The notes below the pieces were generated by a model. That model was not told the origin of the DNA and ran no database searches. It saw only the letters and a program-made list of their open reading frames with translations. Position numbers and translations under genes: made by a program. From the IMG/VR virus record IMGVR_UViG_3300042367_000228, positions 124,001 to 188,000 of that record: 64,000 bases of DNA; one strand, given 5' to 3'. The stretch's first letter is position 1; each line of letters opens with the position of its first letter. Positions 26,604 to 42,385 of this stretch are shown here, one piece after another.

Positions 26604-27041
26604 CTATAGTTTGTTAACTTTAAGGATTCCAAAATCTTGATCTGTAATATCAATACCTTCCGCTGCTGCAGCATTGTAACAGATATCTCTATACCAACGA
26701 CCTACAATTTCATCTTCTGGATCACCATCAAAACCGTACCCTTCTTGTTTTAATTTTTCAATCCAGTAATCATTCCAATCGATTTCAAAGAATCCGTTTC
26801 TGACATTGTCTGGATTAACTCTAAAACCGATTACATCTACCCATGGTTCTTGTTTTAGTGTTGCTTTTTCTTTTTCAGTTAACGGTGCTTTCTCGACAGC
26901 AACTTTAGCTTTTGGTTTAGCTTTAGTTTTTGGTTTAGCTTTTAACTGTTGTTTAGCTTTAATTGCCGCTTGTACTTCTTGTTGGTGTTTTAATTGTGGA
27001 TTTTCGCCACTAAACACTTTTTTTATAAAATTTCCAAACAT
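26604..27041 (-). CDS. Hypothetical protein
   Basis: 145 aa with KEKAT..EPWV...NGFFEIDWN; overlaps the queE stop. Confidence 0.6.
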   Translation of the reverse strand: MFGNFIKKVFSGENPQLKHQQEVQAAIKAKQQLKAKPKTKAKPKAKVAVEKAPLTEKEKATLKQEPWVDVIGFRVNPDNVRNGFFEIDWNDYWIEKLKQEGYGFDGDPEDEIVGRWYRDICYNAAAAEGIDITDQDFGILKVNKL

Positions 27042-27883
27042 TATGTTCCCCAGTTGTTGCCGAAGAGAGGGAGGTGAAGTCTATCACTATATCTCAATCC
27101 GTGTTGTAATGCAAGTTCAGCTACACGCTGATTATTAAGATTGTATACTTCAGTTACTCCGCCTACTGGCATTAAGTAAATTTCACCTTTAAATCCTTTA
27201 TCTTTGTATAACTGCATTACTTCGAGTGCTTCAGTAACATCATCTTCAGACGCTACTACAAACTTTAAATATGACCCATGCCCTGAAAATTGATATTCGG
27301 TTACAATTTCAGGACGTATCGCTTTTTCTCTAGGCTCACCACTTACACTTAGTTTAGGACTAATTGAAAACGTAGTTTGATACCGACGTTCTTGATATAA
27401 GTAATCTTCAAACGTGTTTAATAGTTCTTGTGTACCATTAGTTTCAAATGTAATGTTTTTTAAGTCTGCAAGTTTAGGATGTCTTAGTAATTCTGGATAT
27501 ATTTGTTGCCAACCTGGTAATAATGGTTCGCCGCCTGTAATTACTAAGTGTACTCCACCCCATTCACCGTTAGGTAACAGCGCAATCATTCTGTCTACAA
27601 TTTCATCAGTAGACATAGCTGGACTTAAATGCTTAAACTGCGGATATATCGCAGCATATGAGTCACAACCAGTAGTTACTAATGGAAGTAAATTATAGCT
27701 TGTATATAATGATGCAGATTTTGCAAGATCCAAAGCTTCCGTACTTAATTCACCGTTTTGCATTCCAAAACCTCTACAGCGAAAATTGCAACCAAATGTT
27801 CGTAAAAAAATTGACGGTACTCCCATAAATCGCCCTTCGCCTTGCAGTGAGTAAAATATCTCGCTTATTTTAATGTGTGACAT
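27041..27883 (-). CDS. queE: 7-carboxy-7-deazaguanine synthase (radical SAM)
   Basis: EIFYSLQGEG..GVPSIFLRT.GCNFRC..(insertion)..GCDS, VITGGEPLL, ETNGT, SPKL, RLH. Confidence 0.9.
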   Translation of the reverse strand: MSHIKISEIFYSLQGEGRFMGVPSIFLRTFGCNFRCRGFGMQNGELSTEALDLAKSASLYTSYNLLPLVTTGCDSYAAIYPQFKHLSPAMSTDEIVDRMIALLPNGEWGGVHLVITGGEPLLPGWQQIYPELLRHPKLADLKNITFETNGTQELLNTFEDYLYQERRYQTTFSISPKLSVSGEPREKAIRPEIVTEYQFSGHGSYLKFVVASEDDVTEALEVMQLYKDKGFKGEIYLMPVGGVTEVYNLNNQRVAELALQHGLRYSDRLHLPLFGNNWGT

Positions 27884-28671
27884 GTATTATCCTTGATTAA
27901 TTTAGTTATACCAAATTCTTTAAAAGATTTTCCAACAAACGTTGAAAACTCATTATGAATTGACGCAAATTTATGTGTTATAATAACATCATTATTAATA
28001 ATAGTCAATGTATTTTTAGTAAATGTTGGATAAACTGTTAGTAGTTCTTTACTAGTGTTACAAAATCCTTTAGGTGTACAGTAAGAGTATTTAGATGCAG
28101 TTTGGCTTCTAACTATAGATTGTTGACAAACTATGCGTGGTCGTTTACTAGCTTCTCTTTTTTTGTTAACAGTTGCTATACTGTCTTTTCTACCCTTTGC
28201 TAATGCAACATATATAATACCGTTATATTTGTCAAAAAGTTCTTTAGGAATTCGTTTAATTTCTAAAGTATTCAAATTTTTTGCAACCACTGTGCCTTTA
28301 CTATAATTACTTACAACCTTTGCATGCGATTCTCTAAGGTATGCATACACTCTATTGGTTATTTTATAAGATCGGCATACATCACCAGTTTTAGAATACA
28401 CCATTAAGTGTAATGCTTTAATCATTTTAGGACTATTTGTGCCTTTTGCTAATAATAAATGTGCTATATAATGATGCCTTGCACTTAACGTAATTAAGTT
28501 GTTAATATTATCTAATCCGCCAAATGACTTAGGAACGATATGATGAGTTTCGGTGTATTTGTCATTAAGTACTAAGGTTTTACAATGCTCAATAAATGTT
28601 ACATAGCGGGTTATATTATGATTGTTTGGATTTAAAGAATGTTTTAAAATATGTTGTTTATAGTCAGTCAC
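27865..28671 (-). mobile_element. Free-standing HNH homing endonuclease
   Basis: ETHHIVPKSFGG.D...NLITLSARHHYIAHLLL; basic C-terminus; overlaps the queE start. Confidence 0.8.
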
Positions 28672-28681
28672 CTGTTATTCC

Positions 28682-28921
28682 TTAAACATTGTTTAATCCG
28701 ATTCTAGCATATCCTAGTGACGCGTTAAGTTCACGACGACCTTCACGGTTGTCTACCTTGTTCTCTAAGATAATAAGATTATGTTGTAATTTTTGAAGAT
28801 ATAGCTTACCATTGCGTTCCAATCTGTCAGCCGGATAGTTTTTAATTCTGTCCATATACCGCTCAATCTCGTCTTTTTTGAGCTGGATTCTATGCTCAAG
28901 ATTCTCTTTAGTTTTTTTCAT
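28682..28921 (-). CDS. Hypothetical coiled-coil protein
   Basis: 79 aa, operonic. Confidence 0.5.
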   Translation of the reverse strand: MKKTKENLEHRIQLKKDEIERYMDRIKNYPADRLERNGKLYLQKLQHNLIILENKVDNREGRRELNASLGYARIGLNNV

Positions 28922-29357
28922 TGTAAGCCTCTTTATGAAATTCTTGACAATCGTTAACTGCAGACTTCAATGCTTCTGCATAGTTTAATGTTTGTTGCTC
29001 GGACATTATAGTAGACTGCTGATATTTAAGATAACCATTAAACCACAAATTCCATGTCATTTTAATACGATGCTGAAACCCGTTAAGAAAGCTCAATGTT
29101 TCGTATGCAATACTGCTTAAAAACGAATTTTTAATTTTGTATGTGTTTGAAACATCAAATGGTCTATCCCAGTACGCAGTTTTTTGCGTTGTAAATGTAG
29201 TTACAGTAATCATATTAAGGTCATCTGCCTCGACCATAAACTCAATATTGTCATCGTCGTTGCCGCATGTGCATTGAATTTTATACATTTTACTGTTACC
29301 CCAGTCACTTGTTTTCATAATGCCTACTGCTGGAATTTGTGGTTTTAAGTCTTTCAT
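28908..29357 (-). CDS. Hypothetical protein (CxC motif)
   Basis: 149 aa with DWGNSKMY..QCTCG; AGGAG RBS. Confidence 0.6.
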   Translation of the reverse strand: MKDLKPQIPAVGIMKTSDWGNSKMYKIQCTCGNDDDNIEFMVEADDLNMITVTTFTTQKTAYWDRPFDVSNTYKIKNSFLSSIAYETLSFLNGFQHRIKMTWNLWFNGYLKYQQSTIMSEQQTLNYAEALKSAVNDCQEFHKEAYNEKN

Positions 29358-29365
29358 AACTCTCC

Positions 29366-30043
29366 TTATTTGTTTACAATACTCATAAATTCTGCACGAG
29401 TAGTTGGATCGTTTTTAAATGCACCACCTAACTTACTAGTAACAGTAGAACTGCCAGTATCTTCTACACCTCTTGCAGCAACACAATAATGTTTTGCATC
29501 AATAACTACTGCAATATTATCAGTGCCTAATATGTATTCTAATGCATGGAATACTTGTTCGGTTAATCTTTCTTGTACTTGCGGACGTTTTGCAAAGTAT
29601 TCAACTACACGATTAATTTTGCTTAGTCCAAGTACAACCTCGTTTGGAATATAACCAACTGTTGCAAAGCCGTCAATTACAACTCCGTGATGTTCACAAT
29701 TACTTTGTATGTTTACATTTCTTTCCACAACAATTTCATTGTAGCCCATTTTGTTTTTAATAGTAGTACACTTTGGAAAGTTTTCTTCTTTAAGTCCAAA
29801 ATATATTTCATTTGTGTACATTTTAGCCATTCGATTTGGTGTTTCTGCTAAACTATCATCTGTTAAGTCCATTCCTAATGTTGACCATATTGTTGTAAAT
29901 GCGTTTTCAATAATGTCAATTTTTGTTTTATTATCAACTACTAGGGCTGTATTATTAATCGGAGTTTCGACTCCTTTACTAATTAAATATTCTCTTACTC
30001 GTTTACCTAACGCTGGATCTGTTTTAGTTTTATCAAAGCTCAT
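29366..30043 (-). CDS. folE: GTP cyclohydrolase I
   Basis: ETPNRMAKMY, SNCEHH, GLSKINR, RPQVQERLT, HYCVAARGV. Confidence 0.95.
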   Translation of the reverse strand: MSFDKTKTDPALGKRVREYLISKGVETPINNTALVVDNKTKIDIIENAFTTIWSTLGMDLTDDSLAETPNRMAKMYTNEIYFGLKEENFPKCTTIKNKMGYNEIVVERNVNIQSNCEHHGVVIDGFATVGYIPNEVVLGLSKINRVVEYFAKRPQVQERLTEQVFHALEYILGTDNIAVVIDAKHYCVAARGVEDTGSSTVTSKLGGAFKNDPTTRAEFMSIVNK

Positions 30044-30057
30044 TATTTTAATTCCTG

Positions 30058-30918
30058 TTATATTTGTTTGTGATTTTTAAAAGTAGGTTTATCATGTTTC
30101 CAAATTAATCCAATTTGATAGCATTGTGTAGGATTATCGCTAATATCTTGATTAGTTCGGTATTTTCCTTTAAGTTCACCTTCAAAAATTATTCTCTGTT
30201 TAGAAGGTTTATTTAATCTACCATATGTAATATTATAATTGTTTTCTAAGTAAAAGTCAACATCTTTTTTAGATAAAAAATATTCAACATTGTTAATTAT
30301 ACACCATTTATACCCTTTAGTTGCAGATCTACCATACATGCCATTATTAGTACCTACTCTTGCCATAGTAGTGTTAGCACCAATTCTTGTTTTAATACCG
30401 GTTGTAACAATAATATCATGATGACTATTAGCCTCTTGTAAATCTAATAATTTAGATTTCTTAATAATAGTATGTTCTTTGATGTTAGTATTGTATACTG
30501 TAAATGTGTCTGTTCTTAGCCCAATGTGCGGTTGTAAGTTACGAACAGGGTTACTCCTTGCAGTTTGATGGGACACCCACCCTCTCTCACGAATATTTGT
30601 TATTTTATAGTTTCTAAATTCTAAAATTAATTTAGTCTCTAATTCTACTGCATCTTCTTCAGATAGATTAGTGGCTACTTTAAAAATTATTGGTAATAAC
30701 TGCAATCTAGTTAATTCTCTAATTGTGTTTAATTTATGTGAATTTTTATATTTTCGTGTAGGCCGTGCTTCTTTAAGATGATCAAATAATCGATTATTTT
30801 TACCGTAACCTACATAAAATGGTTTAAATAACAGTGAACAAAATGTAGAAACATATTGACCTGGTGTTCTTGGATCTAAGTATACATAGACATAGTATAT
30901 ATTGTTATTAGATGACAT
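30058..30918 (-). mobile_element. Free-standing GIY-YIG endonuclease with NUMOD3-like motif
   Basis: YYVYVYLDPR...PFYVGYG...R..H, ELETKLI, GTNNGMYGR. AAGGA RBS precedes the ATG at 30918. Confidence 0.78.
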
Positions 30919-30995
30919 ATAAGATTCCTTACTCCTTACATAATTGATTTTTAAAATGGGCATTCCTATCATGATTGCCCATTGTTATTTATTAG

Positions 30996-31157
30996 TTAAG
31001 AGTTCTTTGTCAATGTTTTTAAGTCGTCTTCTAAGTATTCTAGATATTGTGACAAACCTAACAGCATACGTTGATTGTTTGAATCGCTATGTTTAGCAAT
31101 ATCACGTTTTACTTGTGCAATTTTTTCTTGTAATTCTTCTTTAGTTAAATCTGTCAT
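30996..31157 (-). CDS. Small coiled-coil protein (53 aa; not in the ORF track)
   Basis: MTDLTKEELQEKIAQVKRDIAKH...LEYLEDDLKTLTKNS*, with a GGAGG RBS. Confidence 0.6.
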   Translation of the reverse strand: MTDLTKEELQEKIAQVKRDIAKHSDSNNQRMLLGLSQYLEYLEDDLKTLTKNS

Positions 31158-31497
31158 TTTTTACCTCCGATCTTGCTATTTCTAAAAACATTTGATATTT
31201 TTCGTATGCTGCTTTAACAGTTGGATTAGAATCTCTAACATACATATCTTCATAATATTTTTTATTCCAGTCTTCGCACTTTTCAGCTTTGTCAATTAAC
31301 TTTATAAAATCGTTCTCGTGTATTTTAACAGTTAATGACCGTGTAACGTTTGCTCTTTCGCTTGGTAGGTTTGATCTTGACCAATCTAACGAATAGTTAT
31401 CACCTGCAGCATAAAATTGTTCAACGTCTATGCTTCGTATACCGTGTTTCTTAGCTATTGAATGTAGTTCCATTATTTCTTCCAGTAGTTTTCCCAT
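31141..31497 (-). CDS. Hypothetical protein
   Basis: 118 aa ending in NPTVKAAYEKYQMFL. Confidence 0.55.
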   Translation of the reverse strand: MGKLLEEIMELHSIAKKHGIRSIDVEQFYAAGDNYSLDWSRSNLPSERANVTRSLTVKIHENDFIKLIDKAEKCEDWNKKYYEDMYVRDSNPTVKAAYEKYQMFLEIARSEVKNDRFN

Positions 31498-32003
31498 GGA
31501 AAGTCAATCCAAATCGGATCGTCTCGTTTATCAAATTCTTCAGCACAATAATCAACATGTGCATTGCTAGCAGAATTATCAAACACTGTAGCAAATCTTA
31601 CATTTTTATGCCAAACATCGTGTTTCCATCTTATAGAATCTGGTAAACATAATGATTGCCAATCTTCTTTAATCCAATCGAGTGTTGCACCCGAATCGTT
31701 AATATCGTCTACAATTAAAATGTTTTTAGCACGTCCGGTACTTGCTAGTTCGTCATCAGTAACACCAAATGCATCACAAGCCATCCATGCATTATGTTCA
31801 TTGTCGTCTGGATGGTCACGTAAACTAACATGTAATGTTAGCATCTTAACTCCGAGATACTGACTAAGTAAGTTAGCGGGGATAAGTCCCCCGCGTGTGA
31901 TTCCGACAATGTAATCTGGTTTCCAATTAGCAGCTTGAACTTGGCGTGCTATCTCTAATGCGGCACCTTCTAATTGTGCCCAACTATATTTTACTACTTT
32001 CAT
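31473..32003 (-). CDS. Type I purine phosphoribosyltransferase (Gpt-like)
   Basis: KPDYIVGITRGGLIPA, PRPP loop ILIVDDINDSGATL, WIDFPWE. Confidence 0.88.
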   Translation of the reverse strand: MKVVKYSWAQLEGAALEIARQVQAANWKPDYIVGITRGGLIPANLLSQYLGVKMLTLHVSLRDHPDDNEHNAWMACDAFGVTDDELASTGRAKNILIVDDINDSGATLDWIKEDWQSLCLPDSIRWKHDVWHKNVRFATVFDNSASNAHVDYCAEEFDKRDDPIWIDFPWENYWKK

Positions 32004-32431
32004 TCGTCGTCCTTTGGTAACATGCTATCCTCATAGCAAATTGCATAAATTGTTTTTAAATTTCCGTATGCTTTTTCTAAACCTGGATATTCGTCGCATA
32101 ACTTCTTAAATGCATCCCATTCTGGAAACGCATCTATAAAAGGTCGTCCGTTCATTGCAGTTGAGTTACTCCAGCTACCGTTACTACTTAATGTACTACC
32201 TCCTATTCCGTTATATGCATAGTAATTACTTGTTAAATTAGTAGCTATAGTATTATACCCGTATACACCATTAGAACCTGTGATAGTAATTGTATCACTT
32301 GCTGCTGCTGTTCCACTCATAACATTTGACGCCGTGTATGCCGATAATGTACTTGCATCGAACGCCGGTATACGAACATGTGCATCTCCATCCATAGTAA
32401 ATGTAATCGTATCTTTATTTGAATCTATCAT
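32000..32431 (-). CDS. Hypothetical protein
   Basis: 143 aa with a low-complexity N-terminus and C-terminal LCDEYPGLEKAY. Confidence 0.55.
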   Translation of the reverse strand: MIDSNKDTITFTMDGDAHVRIPAFDASTLSAYTASNVMSGTAAASDTITITGSNGVYGYNTIATNLTSNYYAYNGIGGSTLSSNGSWSNSTAMNGRPFIDAFPEWDAFKKLCDEYPGLEKAYGNLKTIYAICYEDSMLPKDDE

Positions 32432-33509
32432 ATAATTTCTCTGCGTTAAAAAACTCTTTTGTTAAATATTCTGCTTGGGTGTTTACATAATGCGCTATAC
32501 TATCATAGTTTTCTATATAATAAATAATTTTATTACATAAATCATAACTGTGCGTTTCGTAATTTTCGTAACTAATAGACCATTCTGACGGGTATTTAAA
32601 ATGATACATATACATTTCTTTATAACTTAGTCTATCGGGTACCATTGGTATAGCACCAAGCAATGCGCCTTCGTAACAACTTATGCCTAGGGTTTCTTGT
32701 AAGTTAGCACTAAACACAATCTTTGCTTCGCTTAATAATTTATGATATTCGTCTTTAGTTAGCTTCTCGTCTTGGCACACTACAAAATCGTATTGCGGTA
32801 ATTGCATAGCTAATGATCTAAAAATATCAACTTGTTTTTCTGGAGCAACCCTATGCGGAAACAATATTAGATCACGTTTTTCTGAATTTTTATAAGGAGT
32901 TAGCGTATCTTCTAAATACTCCATAGGCCAACCTGTTTTTATAATAGACCCATCGTCGTATATTTCGTCCCAATCCTCGTCGTACCATGGATTTTCACTT
33001 GGATAACCATTTTGTATAACATTGTTAAAAAACATTCTTACGTGAAACTCGGTAGCAAAATAGTTATGAGTGTATGCAGTGTACATACTTTTTTCAGCAA
33101 GTCTAACCCATGCGTCTTTAATATTACCTAAAAAGTCGTGTGGATCATAACTTCCTGCGTGCCATAGACCGTGGAATGTCCAATTTAGATGTTCTAAATC
33201 GTTAATGTACTTTAATTGTATAATAGTAGGATTCCATGCATCAGTAAATAAGAAATGATCATTAGGAGTAGTCCTGTGATAATTTTTTAAAAATCCAACA
33301 AGCTGAGAACTTTTCCATACGTTTGTGTCGACAAAGTTTAAAAATGCACCCGGAGTTACATCGGTTGCGTTTTGTTCGCCGTCTATTTGAATTATGTTGT
33401 ATTTGTCGTTAATATAATTGCTTAGTTGTTTAGGGATATGAGTGTGCCATTGTCTAGTATATCTAGTATCTAATGGTTCTACAGGAAATATCCAAATAGT
33501 AGGTTTCAT
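32415..33509 (-). CDS. GT-B (GT4-like) glycosyltransferase
   Basis: ILFPHRVAPEKQ, IVFSANLQETLGISCYEG...AIPMVPDRLSY.EM (ExxGxxxxE motif). Confidence 0.8.
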   Translation of the reverse strand: MKPTIWIFPVEPLDTRYTRQWHTHIPKQLSNYINDKYNIIQIDGEQNATDVTPGAFLNFVDTNVWKSSQLVGFLKNYHRTTPNDHFLFTDAWNPTIIQLKYINDLEHLNWTFHGLWHAGSYDPHDFLGNIKDAWVRLAEKSMYTAYTHNYFATEFHVRMFFNNVIQNGYPSENPWYDEDWDEIYDDGSIIKTGWPMEYLEDTLTPYKNSEKRDLILFPHRVAPEKQVDIFRSLAMQLPQYDFVVCQDEKLTKDEYHKLLSEAKIVFSANLQETLGISCYEGALLGAIPMVPDRLSYKEMYMYHFKYPSEWSISYENYETHSYDLCNKIIYYIENYDSIAHYVNTQAEYLTKEFFNAEKLYDRFK

Positions 33510-33526
33510 AAAATTCCTTAGAGAAT

Positions 33527-33548
33527 GAAAGCTCCATGAGGAGCTTTC
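33527..33548. terminator. Hairpin, probable terminator
   Basis: GAAAGCTCC-atga-GGAGCTTTC in the intergenic gap. Confidence 0.55.
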
Positions 33549-33565
33549 GTGGTTGAAAATAATTG

Positions 33566-33814
33566 TTATGATTTTTTATAATTTTTAGGTCTAACACCGT
33601 TTGGCCAAGGTTTATTACCTTGATATGGTTTGCGTGGACGTTTACTTGCTAAGTATGCACCATACGATTTACTATCTTTGCGATATAAATCCGATGGATC
33701 AAATTTACGTAACTCAATTCTGCAAAAGTCATGAAATGCTTCTAAATCTTCAAAGATTTTAACAACATCTGGACGTGATTCGAAGTATGAGAATGTTTTG
33801 TAATTTTTAGCCAT
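33566..33814 (-). CDS. Small basic hypothetical protein
   Basis: 82 aa with PDVVKIFEDLEAF.DFCR. Confidence 0.6.
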   Translation of the reverse strand: MAKNYKTFSYFESRPDVVKIFEDLEAFHDFCRIELRKFDPSDLYRKDSKSYGAYLASKRPRKPYQGNKPWPNGVRPKNYKKS

Positions 33815-33815
33815 T

Positions 33816-34028
33816 TTATTTTCTTCCGTTTTTTAATATAGTTTGATTAGTACGAACATTTAACGTGTGTTTTAATTCGTGTAGTTGTTGTCTAAGTTTT
33901 GTAATGTGTATCATATGCTTAGGTTTACTGTTACCTGATTGCATATTTTGTTTTTCATAATCAGTTATCTCTTGGCGTAAACGACTAATTTGTTGTTCAA
34001 GCATAGCTTTTGAGATATAATGTTTCAT
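33816..34028 (-). CDS. Small coiled-coil protein
   Basis: Likely start is MKHYISKAM at 34028. Confidence 0.45.
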   Translation of the reverse strand: MKHYISKAMLEQQISRLRQEITDYEKQNMQSGNSKPKHMIHITKLRQQLHELKHTLNVRTNQTILKNGRK

Positions 34029-34029
34029 G

Positions 34030-34188
34030 CTACATATACTTAATAAATGATCCGTTTTCACCATCTTCGGATACTTCAATCCACACTTCTTTGTGTAGAT
34101 ATTCATTTGTTATATTACAGTATAGATCATTACTTATCATTTCGCAACTTTTGTTATCTAATGATAATGTTAATACGTAGTGTTTCAT
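34030..34188 (-). pseudogene. C-terminal remnant of a second T-fold (DpdL/QueD-like) gene, 52 aa
   Basis: MKHYVLTLSLDNKSCEMISNDLY...VWIEVSEDGENGSFIKYM aligns with KSCEMIASDIL...VCVSEDGESDG of 34364-34741. Confidence 0.75.
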
Positions 34189-34275
34189 ATTAGTTGATAT
34201 TTATTATTTTAGTGAAAGTATAAATACAATATTAGTGAGATAGAACTATGCCTAAACTCAAAACCCTTAATAGTA

Positions 34276-34304
34276 ATTATACATGTTATTTGTGCGGTTG
34301 TCAA
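34276..34304 (-). promoter_or_regulatory. Consensus sigma70 promoter
   Basis: TTGACA-17-TATAAT. Confidence 0.65.
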
Positions 34305-34363
34305 GCATTTTACATAAGTATTAATTCCAAAGTCTAAAAATCGATCTAAACGTATAGCTTGTT

Positions 34364-34741
34364 CTATTTCATTAGATGACCTGCGTCAGTTGGCTGGTAT
34401 GTAACAATGCCATCAGATTCACCATCTTCAGATACACAGACTGTATAGTGCCTATCTCCATATTTAGGCAATAAATGATTAGTTAAAATATCACTAGCAA
34501 TCATTTCGCATGATTTGTAATTTTGATCACCTGCAGTGATAAAATCAGTTAATGCCCATTTAACCAAAAAAAACTCTAATTCTCTATCTAAGTGATTAAC
34601 AGAAATAGTTACTTCGATTTTAAAAATGTGACGATGTATATTTTCAAGAAATGCAATTTTAGAATCAATCAATCCTGCATTTGGGTAACAGTGCATACCT
34701 TCAAACTCTGTTCGAATTTTAATAAATGTTTGTAATTTCAT
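34364..34741 (-). CDS. T-fold QueD-like protein, probably DpdL-type
   Basis: FEGMH, LENIHRHIF (LxxxHRHxF rather than the QueD CxxxHGH), ELEF, SCEMIA, VSEDGE; lies in the deazaguanine cluster. Confidence 0.7.
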   Translation of the reverse strand: MKLQTFIKIRTEFEGMHCYPNAGLIDSKIAFLENIHRHIFKIEVTISVNHLDRELEFFLVKWALTDFITAGDQNYKSCEMIASDILTNHLLPKYGDRHYTVCVSEDGESDGIVTYQPTDAGHLMK

Positions 34742-35265
34742 TTAATTATCTTGTCGTCGTTATAGTCGGTCCAACTAGTAAACACATCTTCATTTTGCAA
34801 AACTTTTAAGTTATGTGTCCACACGCCGGGGTTAGTTGCGTTAAAATCTATGTCATCTAATTTAACCATTGTATTATAACTCCAATCTTTAATATTTGCA
34901 ACCGGAAATCTAATTTGAGGAATAAAATTTTCATATGAACATAAATTAGTTTTATTATTAAAATCATTCATTGCTGTAACCGGAATATCTAATGAACAGT
35001 GTTTGCCTAATTTTAAAAAGTGCTCAATAATGTTATTCCAGTTGAGCCAGGTACCTGGTGTGTTTGGATTAAAACTGTGGTTTGCACCAAAGAAGATATG
35101 TGTAATATCTTCTTCAGTATCTAACCGGTGATGTATTGCTTCTGTAGTATGAGCACCAACAACAAATAATGTTTTTAAACCATATGCTGGAGTATGCTCT
35201 ACTTCGGTACCAACAAAAAACTTAGCAGTGTTAGTAGTTATATTGTTATTATACTGTCTATTCAT
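34738..35265 (-). CDS. Uncharacterised protein of the deazaguanine locus
   Basis: 175 aa (FFVGTEVEHTPAYG.KTLFVVG, HIFFGANHSF, KLDDIDFNATNPGVWTH); translationally coupled to both neighbours. Confidence 0.6.
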   Translation of the reverse strand: MNRQYNNNITTNTAKFFVGTEVEHTPAYGLKTLFVVGAHTTEAIHHRLDTEEDITHIFFGANHSFNPNTPGTWLNWNNIIEHFLKLGKHCSLDIPVTAMNDFNNKTNLCSYENFIPQIRFPVANIKDWSYNTMVKLDDIDFNATNPGVWTHNLKVLQNEDVFTSWTDYNDDKIIK

Positions 35266-36931
35266 CTTTAATGCTATCTTCTAGGGTAAGTAAAGTGTCT
35301 TCTTCTTCTTCAGAAAATTCAAATGCCGTCGGATCGACATTATCCTCATCTATGTCGTTAGGATCTATATCTTCAAGTGTCCAAAACTCATTAAACTTTG
35401 TATCAGCATTGATTGTTTTCTTGCCACAATTACCACGTGTACCAGGAATATCAATCCATAATTTGCTATATCTACTAATTAATTTCAATGCAGAACGCTT
35501 AGTTTTACTGCTAATGATTTTATCAATTATATCGCTAACATAAACTGGATTAAATTTTTCATCAACTAACATATATGGCAAAATATTGTTATCAAATGTT
35601 TGATTTGCTCTTTGTACAGCATCAATATGACTCCATACATTATGCCCCATTAAAATAGCGTAACTAAAACTATCCCAACTTGTTCTACCGACTTTGTTAA
35701 TTTTATTCGTACTGCCCATAGTAATCCAATATTTAGGATCATTTAAGTATAGTGGGTTTTTAAATAAGTCTTCATGATCAATGCCATCATTGTCTACTTC
35801 TGTCCAGTTAGGATCACCTGCACCGTAGATACAAATATCTTTTATTTGTACTTGATCAATAAGTGGACTTGGATTAAACACTTTAAAAATACCATCATCG
35901 ATAACCGCGTCTTTAAACAGTCTAGTATCATATGCGTATTTTTTATTATCAACACTCGGGACCATTCGATACACCCATTTAGATCTATCTTCTAATTCTG
36001 TAGTAATGTAAACCTGACCATTTGCTGTAGCCAAAAACGGACTAGCACAATCATAACTAATAGTAAAGCTAGGATTAACATATTTACGAACTGCTCGTTG
36101 AATTATAGTTAGTAAACATGCCCATTCTAATTTACTAGTTCCTAAGAAATGCATCCAGTCGTGCTGGCCTTCTTGAAGCATGTTATCAAATTTTAAACCA
36201 ATAATGCGTTTAAGTACTAACTCGGCATCGCACATGTTTTGTCCACCCATTGCCCAGCCATTAAATGCTTTATCACCGTAGATCTTAGTATCGCAAAACT
36301 TTTTCATACTTTGATACCATTTTTCTGCATCTTTGTGTGTTTCGCCTTGTAATACATTTAAGAATTTACAAGCACCTGTGCGATTTTGAATAAAGTATTC
36401 ATTGTTAATAAATGTACCTTTAACTGCATCTTTGTAATTTCTAATACCTGTTGCTTTTCTACCAGCCGGCATACGTGCTACCCACGCAGGAATATCAAGA
36501 CACATACCGTAATCCATTAACTCGTCCATCCATCGCAGTACTTGTTCACGTTTCTTTTGTGCTTTAGGACAAGTAGGATCTTTCCAATCAGCTGGCCATA
36601 CACCTTTCCCTATTTGGAAGCCTCCAGAGTCACCTAACACCCAACTAGTACTTCTATCTCTATTACGGAACATGTCTTCACTTTCGTCAAACTTATCTAA
36701 ATCTAAGTTTGCATGTCCAGCTGAGTACAAGCACCATTTATAATAAAATTCACCTTTTTCAGGTTCTAAGTAGTTAAGTCCCTCTACACCTGCTTTAAAT
36801 GATGTTGGAATACGTAACGGATCAACATAATTACCATAACGTTGTTTACCAACAAATGTTGAGTAAAACCCTGACGTTGCAGGCAAAAACACGGCATAAT
36901 CCTGTTGTGTTGCTGTTAAGTTTCTATTCAT
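35258..36931 (-). CDS. dpdA: TGT-fold guanine transglycosylase (DpdA-like, presumed to act on DNA)
   Basis: GDSGGFQ catalytic motif, LD.P, NVLQG, WAMGG, MHFLG, YDCAS; clustered with folE and queE. Confidence 0.78.
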   Translation of the reverse strand: MNRNLTATQQDYAVFLPATSGFYSTFVGKQRYGNYVDPLRIPTSFKAGVEGLNYLEPEKGEFYYKWCLYSAGHANLDLDKFDESEDMFRNRDRSTSWVLGDSGGFQIGKGVWPADWKDPTCPKAQKKREQVLRWMDELMDYGMCLDIPAWVARMPAGRKATGIRNYKDAVKGTFINNEYFIQNRTGACKFLNVLQGETHKDAEKWYQSMKKFCDTKIYGDKAFNGWAMGGQNMCDAELVLKRIIGLKFDNMLQEGQHDWMHFLGTSKLEWACLLTIIQRAVRKYVNPSFTISYDCASPFLATANGQVYITTELEDRSKWVYRMVPSVDNKKYAYDTRLFKDAVIDDGIFKVFNPSPLIDQVQIKDICIYGAGDPNWTEVDNDGIDHEDLFKNPLYLNDPKYWITMGSTNKINKVGRTSWDSFSYAILMGHNVWSHIDAVQRANQTFDNNILPYMLVDEKFNPVYVSDIIDKIISSKTKRSALKLISRYSKLWIDIPGTRGNCGKKTINADTKFNEFWTLEDIDPNDIDEDNVDPTAFEFSEEEEDTLLTLEDSIKDE

Positions 36932-38549
36932 GTTTTTTCCATATATATGTTTTATTTCCGCAGTCCCAGATTCTATCATAATTATTATTTTTCATATTTT
37001 CCCATTCGGTTTTTGATAAATCAACAACTTCTAATAATTTAGATAATTTATGTTTTTGAAATTTAATTCTACTCATTATGCGAGACGGATCACTATTTAA
37101 AAAATACCAGTAATTTGGATCAGTATCGTGTATAAATTCAAAACCAAGTTGTGTATATAAATTACCAGTTGACCATCTTCTATCTGCATATGATACAATA
37201 CTACTCGGATTATGTAATTTTATAAAATGTTTAATTAATTTACTACCTGCACCAACTACTGTAGTATTCAATTTATTACAAAAGCGAATCAATTCCCACT
37301 GTGCAGCACTTGTATATCTAGCTTTTGCAAATGTAGCTAACGATACTAATTCACCATCAAACATTGCGCCAATATTTACACTTGACGAGCAATCACCTTG
37401 AATATGATTTTCATTTAAGAAGTTACGTTTATCTGTAGTTGATACGTCTATTATACTACAGTTTCGTGCAAAAATCTTGGTTGATTTATTCAATTTATGC
37501 AATAATTTTGATTTTATAATATCAGTTTGCGTGTTCCATTCATAATCCCATATTTGTATAAGTTGAATATTTTGCTGTTCACATGCAACAGTCTTTGATA
37601 CATGGTATTGTTTAGATTTTCCGTGAAGTTCGCTATGCCAAAAACTTCCATTAAACTCAATTGCAAGATTAAAATCCGGTAAAAAAATGTCAAGCTCACG
37701 TGGTGCAATGATTGTTCTATCATTTCTAATTATGTTTTGAGTGTAATTAGATAAAAAGTCAACTAAATTAGTTTCTCCGGCCGAAACATTAAATCGTTGT
37801 ATATCAATACCAGCTGCAACCAATCTTTTAAGTATCGGCGTTGGAGAACACCCTAGTTCTTCTGCAATTTGACTACATGGTTTCTTTAATGTTACATGCT
37901 GTTCTATAAGAAACTCAAGATTGTGCAATTTATCAATATTCTCATTAGTTAAATGAATATGTTTATTTGACGAAACACCAAACTTTTCAATACAAGTATT
38001 GTGACGTTTATCAATTACGTCATCCCAATTTCTATTAAGAGATGACTGACTAATTTTTAACTTAATCATATCATTTTTAGCTGCATTATCCACACCGTAC
38101 TTTTCTAAATTTCGTTGTTTGATTTTTTCTTTAATTTCTAAAGATTTAAATACGTTATCAACACCGTACTTTTCCATTGTAGCAGCATTTCGAGTTTCTC
38201 TAATAGTTTCATTGTGCATAGGATGACCGCCATACTTAGCTTGATTAGTTTGAGATTTTTTTAATAATATTGCAGGATCAGTGCCCATGCATTTAGCAGA
38301 GCACCATTCCGAATATGATTTTAAACTTTTAACAAACTTAGTAGATAGCTTTCCGCACCGGGTACAGGTTGGTACGTCAATCGTGTCATTAATAACGTGC
38401 CACAATCGTTGATGCGGAGTAGCAGTTTCGCTTAGAAAACTTGTAATGTCAATAAACTCAATAACATGTTCATCTAATATTGTACGTTTAGCAAATAATT
38501 CATTAGCAGTTGATTGCAATTGTATAGAATTATTCAACAGCTTTGTCAT
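36924..38549 (-). mobile_element. Hef/Vsr-like PD-(D/E)xK endonuclease with Zn finger, KYGVDN repeats and a C-terminal Mom-like GNAT domain
   Basis: CTRCG..WCSAKC, repeated EKYGVDN, ELDIF.P..LAIEFNG.FWH. C-terminal ELIRFC..VVGAGSKL..SYADRRWS.GNLY..LGF. Confidence 0.75.
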
Positions 38550-39724: not shown

Positions 39725-42385
39725 TTAATCAAAATCAAATAAATTGTTAAATGTGTTTTTGTCAGATGTGTTAACTAGTTTCCAGTTAAGAATTCCGATT
39801 AAGTTATCTAACTTGTTATCAATAATTGTTTGTTCCATTTCATTATGATCAAACGGTAAGTCTTTAAACCATTGCGGTAATCGTAGTTCGTCTACTGGAT
39901 ATGCAACACTTGTAAACCCCAACGGATTTGGTTTAAGTTTACATACAATTACTTTTGCACCGTCTGTAATAGACATCGAATATTTGTCACTGTACATACG
40001 TTTTAAAGTATTCCAGTTTATACTTGCTCTTACATGCCCGGGCATATTAGTTTTACCTTGTTTATCTTCTTTTGTAGCATATGAAGTAATACTGTTAGCA
40101 CGTTTAGGTGAACCTTTTTCCCACCCAGGTCTAGCTTTAAATAGTAACCTAAATTCTGTAATGTAATCTAATACAGTATCTTCACTTTCGCCTGCTAGAA
40201 CCATTTGTAACACTTGTGATAAAAAATCTTGAATAAATTCCGGTGTATCACTACGTTTTAAATCTAATCCCATAGCTTTAATTTCACCATTTTTACCATT
40301 AGTGTCTTTACGTTTACCTTCTTTATCGTATACTAATACTGCATAACGCTTTTTAGTAATAAACAACGATTTACTTCCGACGATCTCACGTCCGGCTTTA
40401 ATAACTTCGCCACGCGATTTAGGACAATGGAATGCATCTAACATAAACTGCTGGAATGTGCTATTAACTTGATCACTAATTTGATCATATAACTGAACAA
40501 TAGTATCTTTAGACCATGGTAAACTACCATTATCGATATCACGTTTGAGTGTATTGTATGCACTAAAGTAACAGGAGTCAGTATCACCGTAAATAATAGC
40601 TTTACCTGTGTGATTATAATCACCGGTAATGATTTCATTTACTTTTGCAGCCATATGTTTAGCAATTTGGCGACCTACTAGCGTAGTAGATTGTCCAATG
40701 CGCTTATCAAAGAACCTACAACCTGGATTAAGAATAGCACCGTATAAACTATTTAGGTTAATCTTCTTAACTAACTGTCTTTTATCCCAGTATTCTTCTT
40801 CAATTTTATTACCTGCGTTAATAGCTTCTTTTAGTTTTTTCTGCATATCTTTACGTTCTGCATACCATCGTTTAAGTAAACCAGGAATAACTCCTTCTAC
40901 TTCAACGGAAAAGATAGTACCATTAGCAGATAACACCCATGGTTGATTGCTTTCAAACACTAACCTGTATACTTCGGCAGCACTTAGTACATCTGTATCA
41001 CCATTTTCCCAGTCAACTACTATATCAGTACCTATTTCTTCATTCATAACAGCAGTATATTCAAGAGTACCAAATAATCCTTCCCATGCAGCGGCAAATG
41101 ATTTACCTTTTGCTAGTTGCATAGAAATAAATTCATCAGTTGCAACAGGTCTTAACTGACCTACAATAGTCTCCGGACCCATATTTAATGCTCTAATAGC
41201 ACTAGGATACAGAGAGTTGATATCTAGTGATCCGACCCAGTCATGAATTCCTTCTTTTGGATATGCAACATACGCACCTGCAGCTTGAATAGGATCTTCT
41301 CTACGTCTATTAGGTACAACAAATCCTCTGTTATGTGCTTCGTTAATAATAGCTTGTTCTGTTACAGCAACAGCACCCATAGTAGTTTGTAGTAATACTG
41401 TATTTTCATGTGCAAGTGTGTTAGCTAAGTCAATAAATTTTAGTTTTTTGTCTAAACTATCTAATAGCATGGTATCTTGTCTATTATATTCAATAAATGT
41501 TTTAAAGTCATTGTTATATAATTGATCAAGGGTGCCTTCGTATTGTGTTTTACGGTCGCCTAGTTCATATTCTGCAATAGCATCGAGTCTAAAACTATGT
41601 CTTTCTTCATATGTGTACTTTTGATATAGCTGTAAGCTATCTAAATGTACACGTCCTACAAAGTCATATGTTACTGATGCTTTACCGTATTTTTCATATT
41701 CACGTCTTTTTGGTAATTGATCGAATAAGCAGAACCTACGTGTATCATCTTTTGATAATACTTTAGTAACACGATTAACTGTATATGGTATATCAAATCC
41801 TTCACTATTCCAACCACTTAAAATGTCAGCATCTTCTATTAAATTAAGAAATGTGTCTAATAATTCAGCTTCAGTTTTAAATAAAAACGTATTAGGAAAC
41901 TCTTTTACTTGTTCTTCTGCTTGCTCCATAGTTAATGTCTTTGGAGGAATAGCTAAACAGATAAGTGTTTCTAACCATTGTAAGTGTACAGCAATCGCAG
42001 TAATGGGCATAAACGCATCATCGGGCGATGCATAACCACGTTCTGGATCAAAGTCGACCTCGATATCAAAAAACGCAACGTTTAGTTTAGGCGCGTCGTG
42101 GTTAAGATAGTGTTCTGATAAACATGCAAATATTGGATTAATATCTGCTTCAAATGTTTTACTTGTGCTATGTATAGAAAGTTCTTTTCTATACTCTTTT
42201 GTATTTCTACAAACAATTTTTGATACGGGGTCTCTGTAGATTGATTGATATTTCCCTTTCGAGTCTTTATAATATAATGTGTGCTTTACGGGAATGTCTT
42301 TAAACTCCCGTTCGCCTTTTGAGTTTCTTTCTACAATCTTAATAACATCGTTATTGCGATCAAAGTATCCATCTATATAACTCAT
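39725..42385 (-). CDS. Family B DNA polymerase (gp43-like)
   Basis: Exonuclease motifs FDIEV, GWNSEGFD, YNRQD; polymerase motifs DINSLYPS, KINLNSLYG, YGDTDS, KKRYA. Uninterrupted. Confidence 0.95.
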   Translation of the reverse strand: MSYIDGYFDRNNDVIKIVERNSKGEREFKDIPVKHTLYYKDSKGKYQSIYRDPVSKIVCRNTKEYRKELSIHSTSKTFEADINPIFACLSEHYLNHDAPKLNVAFFDIEVDFDPERGYASPDDAFMPITAIAVHLQWLETLICLAIPPKTLTMEQAEEQVKEFPNTFLFKTEAELLDTFLNLIEDADILSGWNSEGFDIPYTVNRVTKVLSKDDTRRFCLFDQLPKRREYEKYGKASVTYDFVGRVHLDSLQLYQKYTYEERHSFRLDAIAEYELGDRKTQYEGTLDQLYNNDFKTFIEYNRQDTMLLDSLDKKLKFIDLANTLAHENTVLLQTTMGAVAVTEQAIINEAHNRGFVVPNRRREDPIQAAGAYVAYPKEGIHDWVGSLDINSLYPSAIRALNMGPETIVGQLRPVATDEFISMQLAKGKSFAAAWEGLFGTLEYTAVMNEEIGTDIVVDWENGDTDVLSAAEVYRLVFESNQPWVLSANGTIFSVEVEGVIPGLLKRWYAERKDMQKKLKEAINAGNKIEEEYWDKRQLVKKINLNSLYGAILNPGCRFFDKRIGQSTTLVGRQIAKHMAAKVNEIITGDYNHTGKAIIYGDTDSCYFSAYNTLKRDIDNGSLPWSKDTIVQLYDQISDQVNSTFQQFMLDAFHCPKSRGEVIKAGREIVGSKSLFITKKRYAVLVYDKEGKRKDTNGKNGEIKAMGLDLKRSDTPEFIQDFLSQVLQMVLAGESEDTVLDYITEFRLLFKARPGWEKGSPKRANSITSYATKEDKQGKTNMPGHVRASINWNTLKRMYSDKYSMSITDGAKVIVCKLKPNPLGFTSVAYPVDELRLPQWFKDLPFDHNEMEQTIIDNKLDNLIGILNWKLVNTSDKNTFNNLFDFD

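What the first reader, a model, noticed from the sequence alone, without database searches (positions are those of the whole stretch)
27865..38549. Three unrelated free-standing endonucleases each sit immediately 5' of a deazaguanine gene
An HNH overlaps the queE start, a GIY-YIG lies 14 nt upstream of folE, and a PD-(D/E)xK gene overlaps the dpdA start. No such endonucleases were recognised in the other ~52 kb. Inference: the locus is a homing hotspot where nucleases cut competitor alleles and spread or swap modification genes. Some may instead discriminate modified from unmodified DNA.
Basis: partly seen in the sequence, partly recalled or inferred. Interest (0 to 1): 0.65.

Follow-up and report, generated by a model that had tools for sequence, protein, structure and literature searches.

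The report
Three homing endonucleases beside deazaguanine genes
Three unrelated selfish nuclease genes sit exactly in front of three DNA-modification genes of a 372-kb phage, and relatives show at least two of them moved in with part of the neighbouring gene; this is the usual behaviour of such elements, not something special to DNA modification.

Summary
An HNH gene (27865-28671), a GIY-YIG gene (30058-30972) and a Hef-like gene with a PD-(D/E)xK-type core (36924-38549) lie directly 5' of queE, folE and a 557-aa protein with a tRNA-guanine-transglycosylase fold (DpdA-like).

Related metagenomic phages show each nuclease gene is a precise single-gene insertion that is missing from otherwise syntenic genomes. 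The HNH and GIY-YIG genes carry clear co-conversion tracts:
- A 3.3-kb block is about 100% identical to a relative whose background is 85-90% identical.
- FolE and QueE are chimeric. Their nuclease-proximal 5' parts are foreign and their 3' parts are local.
- The slot before queE holds an HNH, an unrelated GIY-YIG, a NUMOD3 protein or nothing, depending on the relative.

So homing is well supported for two of the three. The third has only presence/absence evidence.

The link to deazaguanine is not supported as something special. The whole genome has at least 17 such elements, and those with identifiable neighbours sit in or beside conserved genes (terminase, nrdA, nrdB, hsp70, uvsX, capsid). 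Three elements within about 10 kb is expected by chance (P = 0.55). Nothing suggests these nucleases sense DNA modification.

Verdict: an ordinary, well-documented case of a known kind. Side finding: a large unannotated TGT-fold family in PA5oct-like jumbo phages.

The parts
27041..27883 (-). queE (7-carboxy-7-deazaguanine synthase, 280 aa). The likely target gene of the HNH endonuclease, and of a GIY-YIG endonuclease in relatives.
   Evidence: Pfam Radical_SAM; phrog_2076 QueE-like E 7e-56.
27640..27883 (-). Foreign 5' segment of queE: the co-conversion tract linked to the HNH gene.
   Evidence: 50-78% nt identity to all HNH-less alleles, against 77-100% for the rest of queE in close relatives. 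In protein terms, aa 1-82 are 65-73% identical and aa 83-280 are 87-90%. The segment is 100% identical to L001, which carries the HNH gene.
27865..28671 (-). Free-standing HNH homing endonuclease gene (268 aa, GTG start). It is a 788-bp insertion at the RBS/ATG of queE.
   Evidence: PF01844 22.0 bits; phrog_655 E 2.5e-31. The motif is intact. The gene is absent, with precise boundaries, in L003, L008, L014, L016 and L021.
28682..29357 (-). Two small genes of unknown function (79 aa and 149 aa) between the HNH gene and folE. The 79-aa gene is also variably present.
   Evidence: No family hit. g79 is absent in L003, L008 and L014 and present in L016.
29366..30043 (-). folE (GTP cyclohydrolase I, 225 aa). 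It is chimeric.
   Evidence: PF01227 E 1.8e-58. The N-terminal 122 aa are 56-65% identical to close relatives but 80-81% to the distant phages L005 and L006. The C-terminal part is 91-96% identical to close relatives.
29680..30043 (-). Foreign 5' segment of folE: the co-conversion tract linked to the GIY-YIG gene.
   Evidence: 50-80% nt identity to five GIY-less alleles (L007, L014, L021, L016, L008), against 72-100% (mostly 82-100%) for the 3' part.
30058..30972 (-). Free-standing GIY-YIG homing endonuclease gene (304 aa). It lies within an insertion of about 946 bp (about 30057-31002) between g53 and folE.
   Evidence: PF22945 51.5 bits; motifs present. It is 99.7-100% identical in L001 and L003, whose backbones are 83-91% identical. 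It is absent in L007-L017 and L019-L022. A 48%-identical homologue sits in the same place before folE in the distant L005.
27700..31000 (-). Block that is about 100% identical at nucleotide level (90% or more in every 100-nt window) to relative L001. It is bounded by the upstream end of the GIY-YIG insertion and a point about 180 nt inside queE.
   Evidence: Sliding-window identity against a background of 78-93%. In L003 the block is 29000-31000 only, without the HNH gene.
31473..32003 (-). Phosphoribosyltransferase gene in the same module.
   Evidence: PF00156 E 2e-16. It is conserved next to queE in PA5oct-like phages.
32415..33509 (-). 364-aa gene, possibly a glycosyltransferase, that co-occurs with the TGT-fold gene.
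   Evidence: 43% identical to PA5oct-group proteins, one of which is annotated glycosyltransferase family 4. Pfam glycosyltransferase hits are only sub-threshold.
35258..36931 (-). DpdA-like gene (557 aa from the conserved ATG at 36931) with a tRNA-guanine transglycosylase fold.
   Evidence: Foldseek against TGT/QTRT1: E 4e-8, prob 1.0, TM about 0.5 by target. DSGGFQ, LDxP, HFLG and YDCASPF are invariant in 10 homologues. There is no Pfam TGT hit.
36924..38549 (-). Free-standing Hef-like homing endonuclease gene (541 aa). It is a 1618-bp insertion exactly at the start codon of the DpdA-like gene.
   Evidence: phrog_3339 E 3.6e-126; DUF7487. A PD-(D/E)xK-type core is seen in its homologues. Its C-terminal domain has a GNAT fold. 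The gene is absent in L008, L016, L020-L022 and L114-L117, where g133 abuts the DpdA-like gene.

Best explanation
The three genes are free-standing homing endonuclease genes of three unrelated nuclease folds: HNH, GIY-YIG and a Vsr/MTES_1575-type PD-(D/E)xK ('Hef-like'). Each has inserted independently just upstream of a conserved gene of the phage's 7-deazaguanine module: queE, folE and a TGT-fold DpdA-like gene.

Inferred mechanism: during co-infection the nuclease cuts the nuclease-less allele of a related phage, inside or next to the conserved downstream gene. Repair then copies the nuclease gene, plus a stretch of the donor's neighbouring gene, into the recipient. This spreads the element and leaves chimeric folE and queE alleles that are presumably resistant to cutting.

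Shown here:
- The nuclease families.
- The precise presence/absence boundaries.
- The identity blocks and the chimeric genes.
- Repeated use of the queE slot by unrelated endonucleases.

Inferred, not shown:
- Actual cleavage, and where the cut sites lie.
- That the Hef-like copy is currently active.

The deazaguanine genes are targets because they are conserved, like the other conserved genes that carry such elements in this genome, not because of what they do.
For: Families.

Precise insertions against syntenic relatives:
- The Hef-like gene takes over the RBS and ATG of the DpdA-like gene and ends in an 8-nt stop/start overlap.
- The HNH gene does the same at queE, with a 19-nt overlap.

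Co-conversion:
- Window against L001: about 100% identity over 27700-31000 in an 85-90% background, with a sharp edge at the upstream end of the GIY-YIG insertion.
- L003 carries the GIY-YIG block without the HNH gene.
- The nuclease-proximal 5' parts of folE and queE are much more diverged from nuclease-less alleles than their 3' parts.
- The folE N-terminal part is closest to the distant phages L005 and L006. L005 carries a 48%-identical GIY-YIG homologue in the same position.

Independent second case at the queE slot:
- A 216-aa GIY-YIG gene plus the first ~200 nt of queE are 97-100% identical between L007 and L017, whose flanks are 42-75% identical.
- The slot also holds a NUMOD3 protein in L115 and L116.

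Genome-wide habit: other elements split terminase, nrdA and hsp70. Others sit beside nrdB, between gp32 and uvsX, after the capsid gene, and as an intein in a UvsW-like helicase.
Against: - No cleavage data exist, and the cut sites are unknown.
- For the Hef-like gene, the only other copy found is the same strain (L034, 100% over 13.4 kb). No co-conversion tract is visible in the 5' end of the DpdA-like gene.
- Identity blocks could in principle come from ordinary recombination between co-infecting phages. However, their edges coincide with nuclease gene ends in three independent comparisons.
- The window's Hef-like copy matches PD-(D/E)xK Pfam models only below threshold.
Confidence: 0.85

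Rival explanations
1. The nucleases are tied functionally to the modification pathway. They would cut unmodified or differently modified DNA of the host or of competitors, acting like modification-aware restriction enzymes linked to the genes that protect the phage's own DNA.
For: Three of the four deazaguanine genes have a nuclease gene directly upstream, with P about 1e-4 under a uniform model. Two of them are translationally coupled to the downstream gene by stop/start overlaps. PA5oct-type phages do carry modified G (PMC12191111).
Against: - All three are ordinary homing endonuclease families with sequence-reading DNA-binding modules: a Zn ribbon, DUF7487 repeats and an HTH.
- All three are missing from close relatives that keep the full modification module.
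- The same families sit at terminase, nrd, hsp70 and uvsX elsewhere in the genome.
- The fourth deazaguanine gene, queD, has none beside it.
- The excess shrinks to P 0.015-0.065 if the elements favour conserved genes.
Confidence: 0.04
2. The genes are decayed or inactive relics, and the mosaic blocks come from general homologous recombination between co-infecting relatives, not from nuclease-initiated repair.
For: No activity data exist. Mosaicism is widespread in these phages: the backbone varies between 50 and 100% identity. The Hef-like gene shows no flanking tract.
Against: - The ORFs are intact with their catalytic motifs.
- Copies are 99.7-100% identical across diverged backbones.
- Block edges coincide with nuclease gene ends in three independent pairs: window/L001, window/L003 and L007/L017.
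- Tracts always extend into the downstream gene.
Confidence: 0.08
3. The elements act as vehicles that swap whole modification genes, changing which modification a phage makes.
For: In recent events (window against L001 and L003) the ~100% identity block covers all of folE and g149.
Against: - The older tracts stop inside folE (about 370 nt) and queE (about 250 nt).
- The exchanged segments encode the same enzymes.
- No gain or loss of a pathway gene accompanies nuclease presence in any locus, apart from the small g79 of unknown function.
Confidence: 0.03

Closest known systems
Free-standing homing endonuclease genes of T4-like phages (seg, mob, hef; marker exclusion and co-conversion between T-even phages). 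This is from general knowledge of the field; Hef-like genes are annotated in the T4-like and jumbo phage records.
   Same: - They are intergenic, single-gene insertions next to conserved DNA and nucleotide metabolism genes.
- They show presence/absence polymorphism.
- Flanking sequence is co-converted.
- Different endonuclease families replace each other at one slot.
   Different: - Here the neighbours are 7-deazaguanine pathway genes in an uncultured 372-kb jumbo phage.
- Two of the three insertions take over the downstream gene's RBS and start codon and overlap it.
- No experimental cleavage data exist.
Hef-like homing endonucleases (phrog_3339) of T4-like, Campylobacter, PA5oct-like and Lak phages
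   Same: Full-length match (E 3.6e-126). It is 32-36% identical to annotated Hef-like proteins. PA5oct-like phages carry one splitting the DNA polymerase gene in the homologous module.
   Different: This copy sits at the start codon of the DpdA-like gene, a position that is empty in every relative found.
DpdA / tRNA-guanine transglycosylase superfamily (DpdA3 of Cellulophaga phage phiST and Campylobacter phages; PMC10516641)
   Same: - TGT fold and TGT-like catalytic motifs.
- Pathway context of folE, queD and queE without queC, as in DpdA3 phages.
- Position between the CDG genes and the DNA polymerase gene, as in phiST.
   Different: - It is twice as long (557 aa against 259 aa).
- It is not detected by Pfam TGT.
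- The alignment to phiST DpdA3 is colinear but weak (hhalign E 0.017).
- Activity is untested.

Membership tests
Free-standing homing endonuclease gene | Encodes a nuclease of a recognised homing endonuclease family and is not inside an intron or intein | tested here: met
   HNH, GIY-YIG and Hef-like family hits. Each is a separate ORF between intact genes.
Free-standing homing endonuclease gene | Presence/absence polymorphism at a fixed site in otherwise syntenic relatives | tested here: met
   All three have empty sites with base-level boundaries in relatives.
Free-standing homing endonuclease gene | Co-conversion of flanking sequence with the element | tested here: met
   Met for the HNH and GIY-YIG genes, and for the GIY-216 gene in relatives. 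Inconclusive for the Hef-like gene, because no diverged relative carries it.
Free-standing homing endonuclease gene | Site-specific cleavage of the element-less allele | not testable with these tools
   Needs expressed protein and target DNA.
HNH endonuclease (PF01844) | Score over the Pfam cut-off and an intact His/Asn motif | tested here: met
   22.0 bits against 21.4, a narrow margin. phrog_655 E 2.5e-31. HH...NN...HH is present.
GIY-YIG endonuclease | GIY-YIG domain over the cut-off with the Tyr/Arg/Glu motifs | tested here: met
   PF22945 51.5 bits against 27. The motifs are visible. The classic PF01541 model did not pick up this copy.
PD-(D/E)xK (Vsr/MTES_1575-type) nuclease | Match to a PD-(D/E)xK family model and conserved acidic/basic core residues | tested here: inconclusive
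   - The window copy is only sub-threshold: MTES_1575 15.8 bits against a cut-off of 38.2, and PvuRts1I_N E 0.006.
- 13 of 23 homologues hit MTES_1575 (best E 7e-7) and 5 of 23 hit Vsr.
- D287, E298, H305, H316 and K319 are invariant.
- The structure searches were dominated by the C-terminal GNAT domain, so the nuclease domain was not tested by fold.
DpdA / TGT superfamily | TGT (beta/alpha)8 fold | tested here: met
   The top 50 Foldseek PDB hits are all TGT/QTRT1 (E 4e-8 to 9e-7, prob 1.0). The model has pLDDT 72.5 and pTM 0.74.
DpdA / TGT superfamily | Sequence match to the Pfam TGT model (PF01702) | tested here: not met
   No hit at E <= 1 in the whole genome, none in hmmscan, and none in the PDB sequence/profile search.
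DpdA / TGT superfamily | Conserved catalytic Asp motifs (DSGGFQ-type and DC-x-x-P-type) | tested here: met
   D117-S-G-G-F-Q, L161-D162-x-P and Y-D310-C-A-S-P are invariant in 10 homologues down to 32% identity. Their correspondence to the catalytic residues of TGT rests on my knowledge of the TGT motifs. I did not check it by superposition.
DpdA3 subfamily | Significant similarity to phiST CGPG_00065 | tested here: inconclusive
   hhalign E 0.017, probability 2.7%, though colinear over the motifs. tblastn of the protein finds no Cellulophaga or Campylobacter phage.
DpdA (function) | Exchanges guanine in DNA for a 7-deazaguanine base | not testable with these tools
   Needs biochemistry or genetics, for example in PA5oct.
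Modification-dependent (type IV-like) nuclease | A modified-base sensor domain fused to the nuclease, and conservation together with the modification module | tested here: not met
   No sensor domain was detected. All three genes are absent from relatives that keep the module. Cleavage preference is untested.

The most novel reading that the evidence does not exclude
Homing-endonuclease-driven gene conversion is a main route by which co-infecting PA5oct-like jumbo phages exchange pieces of their guanine-modification enzymes. This would produce chimeric FolE and QueE, and possibly chimeric DpdA-like proteins. The TGT-fold 557-aa protein at the third slot would be a new, very large DpdA subfamily (more than 7,600 unannotated metagenomic members). 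It would be the missing DNA transglycosylase for the modified G reported in PA5oct.
Probability: 0.3. Interest if true: 0.6.

Novelty: new member of a known kind. Interest (0 to 1): 0.35.

Why it matters
- It gives an unusually clean natural record of homing in uncultured jumbo phages. The record includes base-level insertion sites, co-conversion tracts of defined length, chimeric enzymes, and one slot used by three unrelated endonucleases.
- It shows that a cluster of nuclease genes next to DNA-modification genes should not be read as a functional link without a genome-wide census.
- The tract boundaries predict where the cut sites should lie: within the first ~200-370 nt of queE and folE. 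That makes cleavage assays straightforward to design.
- The side finding matters more for the DNA-modification field. A widespread, unannotated TGT-fold family lies in the module shared with PA5oct, whose G is modified but for which the one paper read here (PMC12191111) names no transglycosylase.

Tried and rejected
- Megablast of the 12.7-kb region against GenBank phages found no match. The phage is known only from metagenomes.
- The Pfam TGT and QueC models found nothing in the whole genome.
- A profile of the DpdA-like family against PDB sequences gave only noise. The fold search was needed.
- The hhalign comparison to phiST DpdA3 was colinear but not significant, so I do not file the gene under DpdA3.
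- A search for diverged relatives carrying the Hef-like gene found only the same strain (L034). All other homologues were 50% identical or less (mostly 34-44%) and in other contexts. Co-conversion at the DpdA-like gene therefore could not be tested.
- The two closest DpdA-like homologues (93% and 85% identical) also lack the Hef-like gene.
- Foldseek and VIA-align searches with the whole Hef-like model were filled by the C-terminal GNAT domain. They say nothing about the nuclease core.
- Physical clustering as evidence of a hotspot was rejected (P = 0.55).
- Not used: sequencing-run and read-laying tools, the complex predictor and the large representative search. Nothing in the claim depended on them.

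Full report
**What the window is**

The window is bases 124001-188000 of a 372,016-bp virus record with direct terminal repeats, rated complete. It is a jumbo phage with 32-42% G+C and no near match among GenBank phages.

All genes between 25.6 and 42.4 kb lie on the minus strand. In transcription order they are:
- DNA polymerase (39725-42385)
- a 245-aa gene
- a 133-aa gene
- the Hef-like gene (36924-38549)
- a 557-aa gene (35258-36931)
- several small genes
- a 364-aa gene (32415-33509)
- a phosphoribosyltransferase (31473-32003)
- small genes
- the GIY-YIG gene (30058-30972)
- folE (29366-30043)
- 149-aa and 79-aa genes
- the HNH gene (27865-28671)
- queE (27041-27883)
- a 145-aa gene
- a 5'-3' exonuclease/RNase H

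**The observation**

All three nuclease calls hold.
- **HNH gene.** It just passes the Pfam cut-off (22.0 bits against 21.4). It matches a phage homing endonuclease family strongly (phrog_655, E 2.5e-31) and has an intact His/Asn motif.
- **GIY-YIG gene.** It scores 51.5 bits on PF22945 and shows the expected Tyr, Arg and Glu motifs.
- **Third gene.** It is a full-length member of the Hef-like homing endonuclease family (phrog_3339, E 3.6e-126). It is 32-36% identical to annotated Hef-like proteins of T4-like, Acinetobacter, Yersinia and Campylobacter phages.

The Hef-like protein has this make-up:
- a zinc ribbon;
- repeats of a K-Y-G-x-x-N motif (DUF7487);
- a helix-turn-helix;
- a small alpha/beta core with invariant D287, E298, H305, H316 and K319;
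- a C-terminal GNAT fold (Z 13.8 to acetyltransferases; phage Mu Mom is among the hits).

13 of 23 homologues hit REase_MTES_1575 (best E 7e-7) and 5 hit Vsr. The window copy itself is only sub-threshold (E 0.015), so I mark that membership as inconclusive for this copy.

For the third, the conserved start of the downstream gene is the ATG at 36931. The real overlap is therefore 8 nt (stop and start share ATGAATAG), not 56 nt.

**Is the third neighbour a dpdA?**

The Pfam TGT model finds nothing in the whole genome, and a family profile finds no PDB sequence. Three lines of evidence still point to the TGT superfamily:
- An AlphaFold model built on ten homologues (pLDDT 72.5, pTM 0.74) matches only tRNA-guanine transglycosylases at the top of the PDB search (E 4e-8, probability 1.0).
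- The invariant motifs DSGGFQ, LDxP, HFLG and YDCASPF look like the catalytic motifs of TGT. That correspondence is from my knowledge of TGT and was not checked by superposition.
- The genome has folE, queE and queD (queD lies outside the window, at genome position 192907-193440) but no queC. This is the gene set of phages that use the DpdA3 subfamily (PMC10516641).

The protein is twice the length of phiST DpdA3, and the alignment to it is colinear but not significant. I therefore call it DpdA-like, of the TGT fold, and not a member of a named subfamily.

The module of polymerase, clamp, this gene, the 364-aa gene, phosphoribosyltransferase, queE and RNase H is shared with PA5oct-like Pseudomonas jumbo phages. 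PA5oct DNA resists enzymes in a way that points to a modified G (PMC12191111).

**Comparative evidence for mobility**

A scan of IMG/VR with FolE gave 32 related loci. Look-ups of the closest DpdA-like proteins gave four more. Gene-by-gene mapping and nucleotide alignment show that each nuclease gene is a precise single-gene insertion.

- **Hef-like gene.**
  - It is absent from every relative that covers the site (L008, L016, L020-L022, L114-L117). In those, the 133-aa gene abuts the DpdA-like gene.
  - At base level, the insertion begins at the start codon of the DpdA-like gene and uses its ribosome-binding site.
  - The displaced gene restarts 1618 bp downstream, overlapping the nuclease stop.
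- **HNH gene.**
  - It is a 788-bp insertion at the ribosome-binding site and ATG of queE.
  - It is present in L001, L002 and L004.
  - It is absent from L003, L008, L014-L016, L019, L021-L023 and L031.
- **GIY-YIG gene.**
  - It lies within an insertion of about 946 bp between the 53-aa gene and folE.
  - It replaces the -10 part of a TTGACA-17-TATAAT promoter-like sequence that five relatives without it conserve.
  - It is present in L001-L004 and absent in the other close relatives.

**Co-conversion**

- **Window against L001.** Identity is about 100% from 27700 to 31000. That covers about 180 nt of queE, the HNH gene, the two small genes, folE and the GIY-YIG gene. The background is 78-93% identical, and there is a sharp edge at the upstream end of the GIY-YIG insertion.
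- **Window against L003.** L003 has the GIY-YIG gene but not the HNH gene. It shares only the 29000-31000 block, and its queE 5' end is 63-70% identical.
- **folE against five alleles without the nucleases.** The 5' ~370 nt are 50-80% identical, while the 3' part is mostly 82-100% identical.
- **queE against the same five alleles.** The 5' ~250 nt are 50-78% identical, against 77-100% for the rest in the close relatives L007 and L014.

In protein terms:

| Protein part | Close relatives | L005 / L006 (polymerase 58% identical) |
|---|---|---|
| FolE residues 1-122 | 56-65% | 80-81% |
| FolE residues 123-225 | 91-96% | 73-81% |

L005 carries a 48%-identical GIY-YIG homologue in the same position. 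FolE is therefore a chimera. Its nuclease-proximal part came from outside the local lineage, most simply together with the nuclease gene. QueE shows the same pattern: residues 1-82 are 65-73% identical and residues 83-280 are 87-90% identical in close relatives.

**The queE slot is reused**

- In L007, L009-L013, L017, L020 and L032 the same position holds an unrelated 216-aa GIY-YIG gene.
- Between L007 and L017 that gene plus the first ~200 nt of queE are 97-100% identical. The flanks are 42-75% identical. This is a second, independent co-conversion tract into queE.
- In L115 and L116 a 366-aa NUMOD3 protein follows the 149-aa gene at this place.
- In this narrow sense, the site before queE is a recurrent landing place.

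**Why the deazaguanine link is not special**

Searching the whole genome with family models and with the nuclease proteins finds at least 14 further elements. Their neighbours, where identifiable, are conserved genes:
- GIY-YIG genes split the large terminase, nrdA and hsp70.
- An HNH gene lies beside nrdB.
- A NUMOD3 gene lies between gp32 and uvsX.
- One Hef-like gene follows the major capsid gene, and another lies about 1 kb downstream of a Rad50-like (SMC-domain) gene that a second NUMOD3 gene directly follows.
- A LAGLIDADG intein sits in a UvsW-like helicase.

With 16 free-standing elements in 372 kb, three within 9.5 kb is expected (P = 0.55).

Three of the four deazaguanine genes having an element directly upstream is unlikely if insertion is uniform over 463 genes (P about 1e-4). 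It is unremarkable if the elements are confined to some 60-100 conserved genes (P 0.065-0.015). folE in particular is among the most conserved genes here: 85-93% identical over most of its length between L007 and L017, whose neighbouring genes are about 50% identical. The fourth pathway gene, queD, has no element beside it.

**Mechanism and rivals**

The best explanation is ordinary homing, at confidence 0.85. The nuclease cuts the empty allele of a co-infecting relative in or near the conserved downstream gene. Repair then copies the element plus a stretch of the donor gene.

The families, the insertion boundaries, the tracts and the slot reuse are shown. Cleavage and the cut sites are inferred.

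- **Modification-sensing role.** I found no support. No modified-base sensor domain was detected, though none was searched for specifically. The genes are dispensable in relatives that keep the module, and the same families sit at unrelated genes.
- **Swapping of whole modification genes.** This is not supported either. Older tracts end inside the genes, and the exchanged parts encode the same enzymes.
- **Relics plus general recombination.** This is hard to square with intact motifs, near-identical copies in diverged backbones, and block edges that coincide with nuclease gene ends in three independent pairs.

**Verdict**

This is a real, well-documented set of homing endonuclease genes of a known kind. 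The 'hotspot' and modification-related readings are not supported.

The most interesting by-product is the TGT-fold family. It has more than 7,600 metagenomic homologues, and none of the 120 listed carries a Pfam domain or an informative name.

Noticed in passing
window 35258-36931 (-): The DpdA-like, TGT-fold protein belongs to a very large family: more than 7,600 hits among 8,000 scored candidates. None of the 120 listed hits has a Pfam domain or an informative name. Its homologues in PA5oct-like Pseudomonas jumbo phages are annotated 'hypothetical'. They lie in the same module of polymerase, clamp, this gene, GT-like gene, PRTase and queE. PA5oct is reported to have a modified G, but the paper read here names no transglycosylase. 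This may be a new DpdA subfamily.
   Followed up: partly
window 36924-38549 (-), residues 361-541: The Hef-like homing endonuclease ends in a GNAT-fold domain (Z 13.8). Its Foldseek top hit is phage Mu Mom, a DNA-modifying GNAT enzyme. 4 of 23 homologues hit the Pfam Mom family (best E 1.2e-7). What a Mom-like domain does in a homing endonuclease is unexplained.
   Followed up: partly
whole genome (G000); queD at genome 192907-193440 (+), outside the window: The genome has folE, queD and queE but no queC and no Pfam-detectable TGT. A phosphoribosyltransferase and a possible glycosyltransferase (window 32415-33509) sit in the module. This suggests a modification derived from 7-carboxy-7-deazaguanine, possibly elaborated further.
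   Followed up: partly
genome 20974-23829, 261575-264648, 293700-296993 (loci L120, L126, L128): The large terminase, hsp70 and nrdA genes are each split into two ORFs by a GIY-YIG gene. I did not check whether these are introns or truly split genes.
   Followed up: no
genome 9113-11695 (locus L118): A UvsW-like helicase ORF of 860 aa carries a LAGLIDADG domain in its middle. This is probably an intein.
   Followed up: no
window 30973-31040, and L007 2780-2900, L008 9900-10030, L014 110-225, L016 and L021: Relatives without the GIY-YIG gene conserve a TTGACA-17-TATAAT promoter-like sequence just before folE. In the window the insertion starts right after the TTGACA and removes the TATAAT. folE is then presumably transcribed through the nuclease gene.
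   Followed up: partly
L016 5953-6636; L114 8188-8604: Relatives carry further nuclease genes in another slot, between the 175-aa and 125-aa genes downstream of the DpdA-like gene. L016 has a GIY-YIG gene there. L114 has a 138-aa ORF with a weak HNH hit. That slot is empty in the window.
   Followed up: no
L033 (PP408249.1 201926-207152): In PA5oct-like phage PAC2 the DNA polymerase gene of the homologous module is split by a gene annotated as a Hef-like homing endonuclease.
   Followed up: no
window 28682-28921 (-): The 79-aa gene next to the HNH gene is itself variably present. It is absent in L003, L008 and L014 and present in L016 without the HNH gene. Its function is unknown.
   Followed up: no
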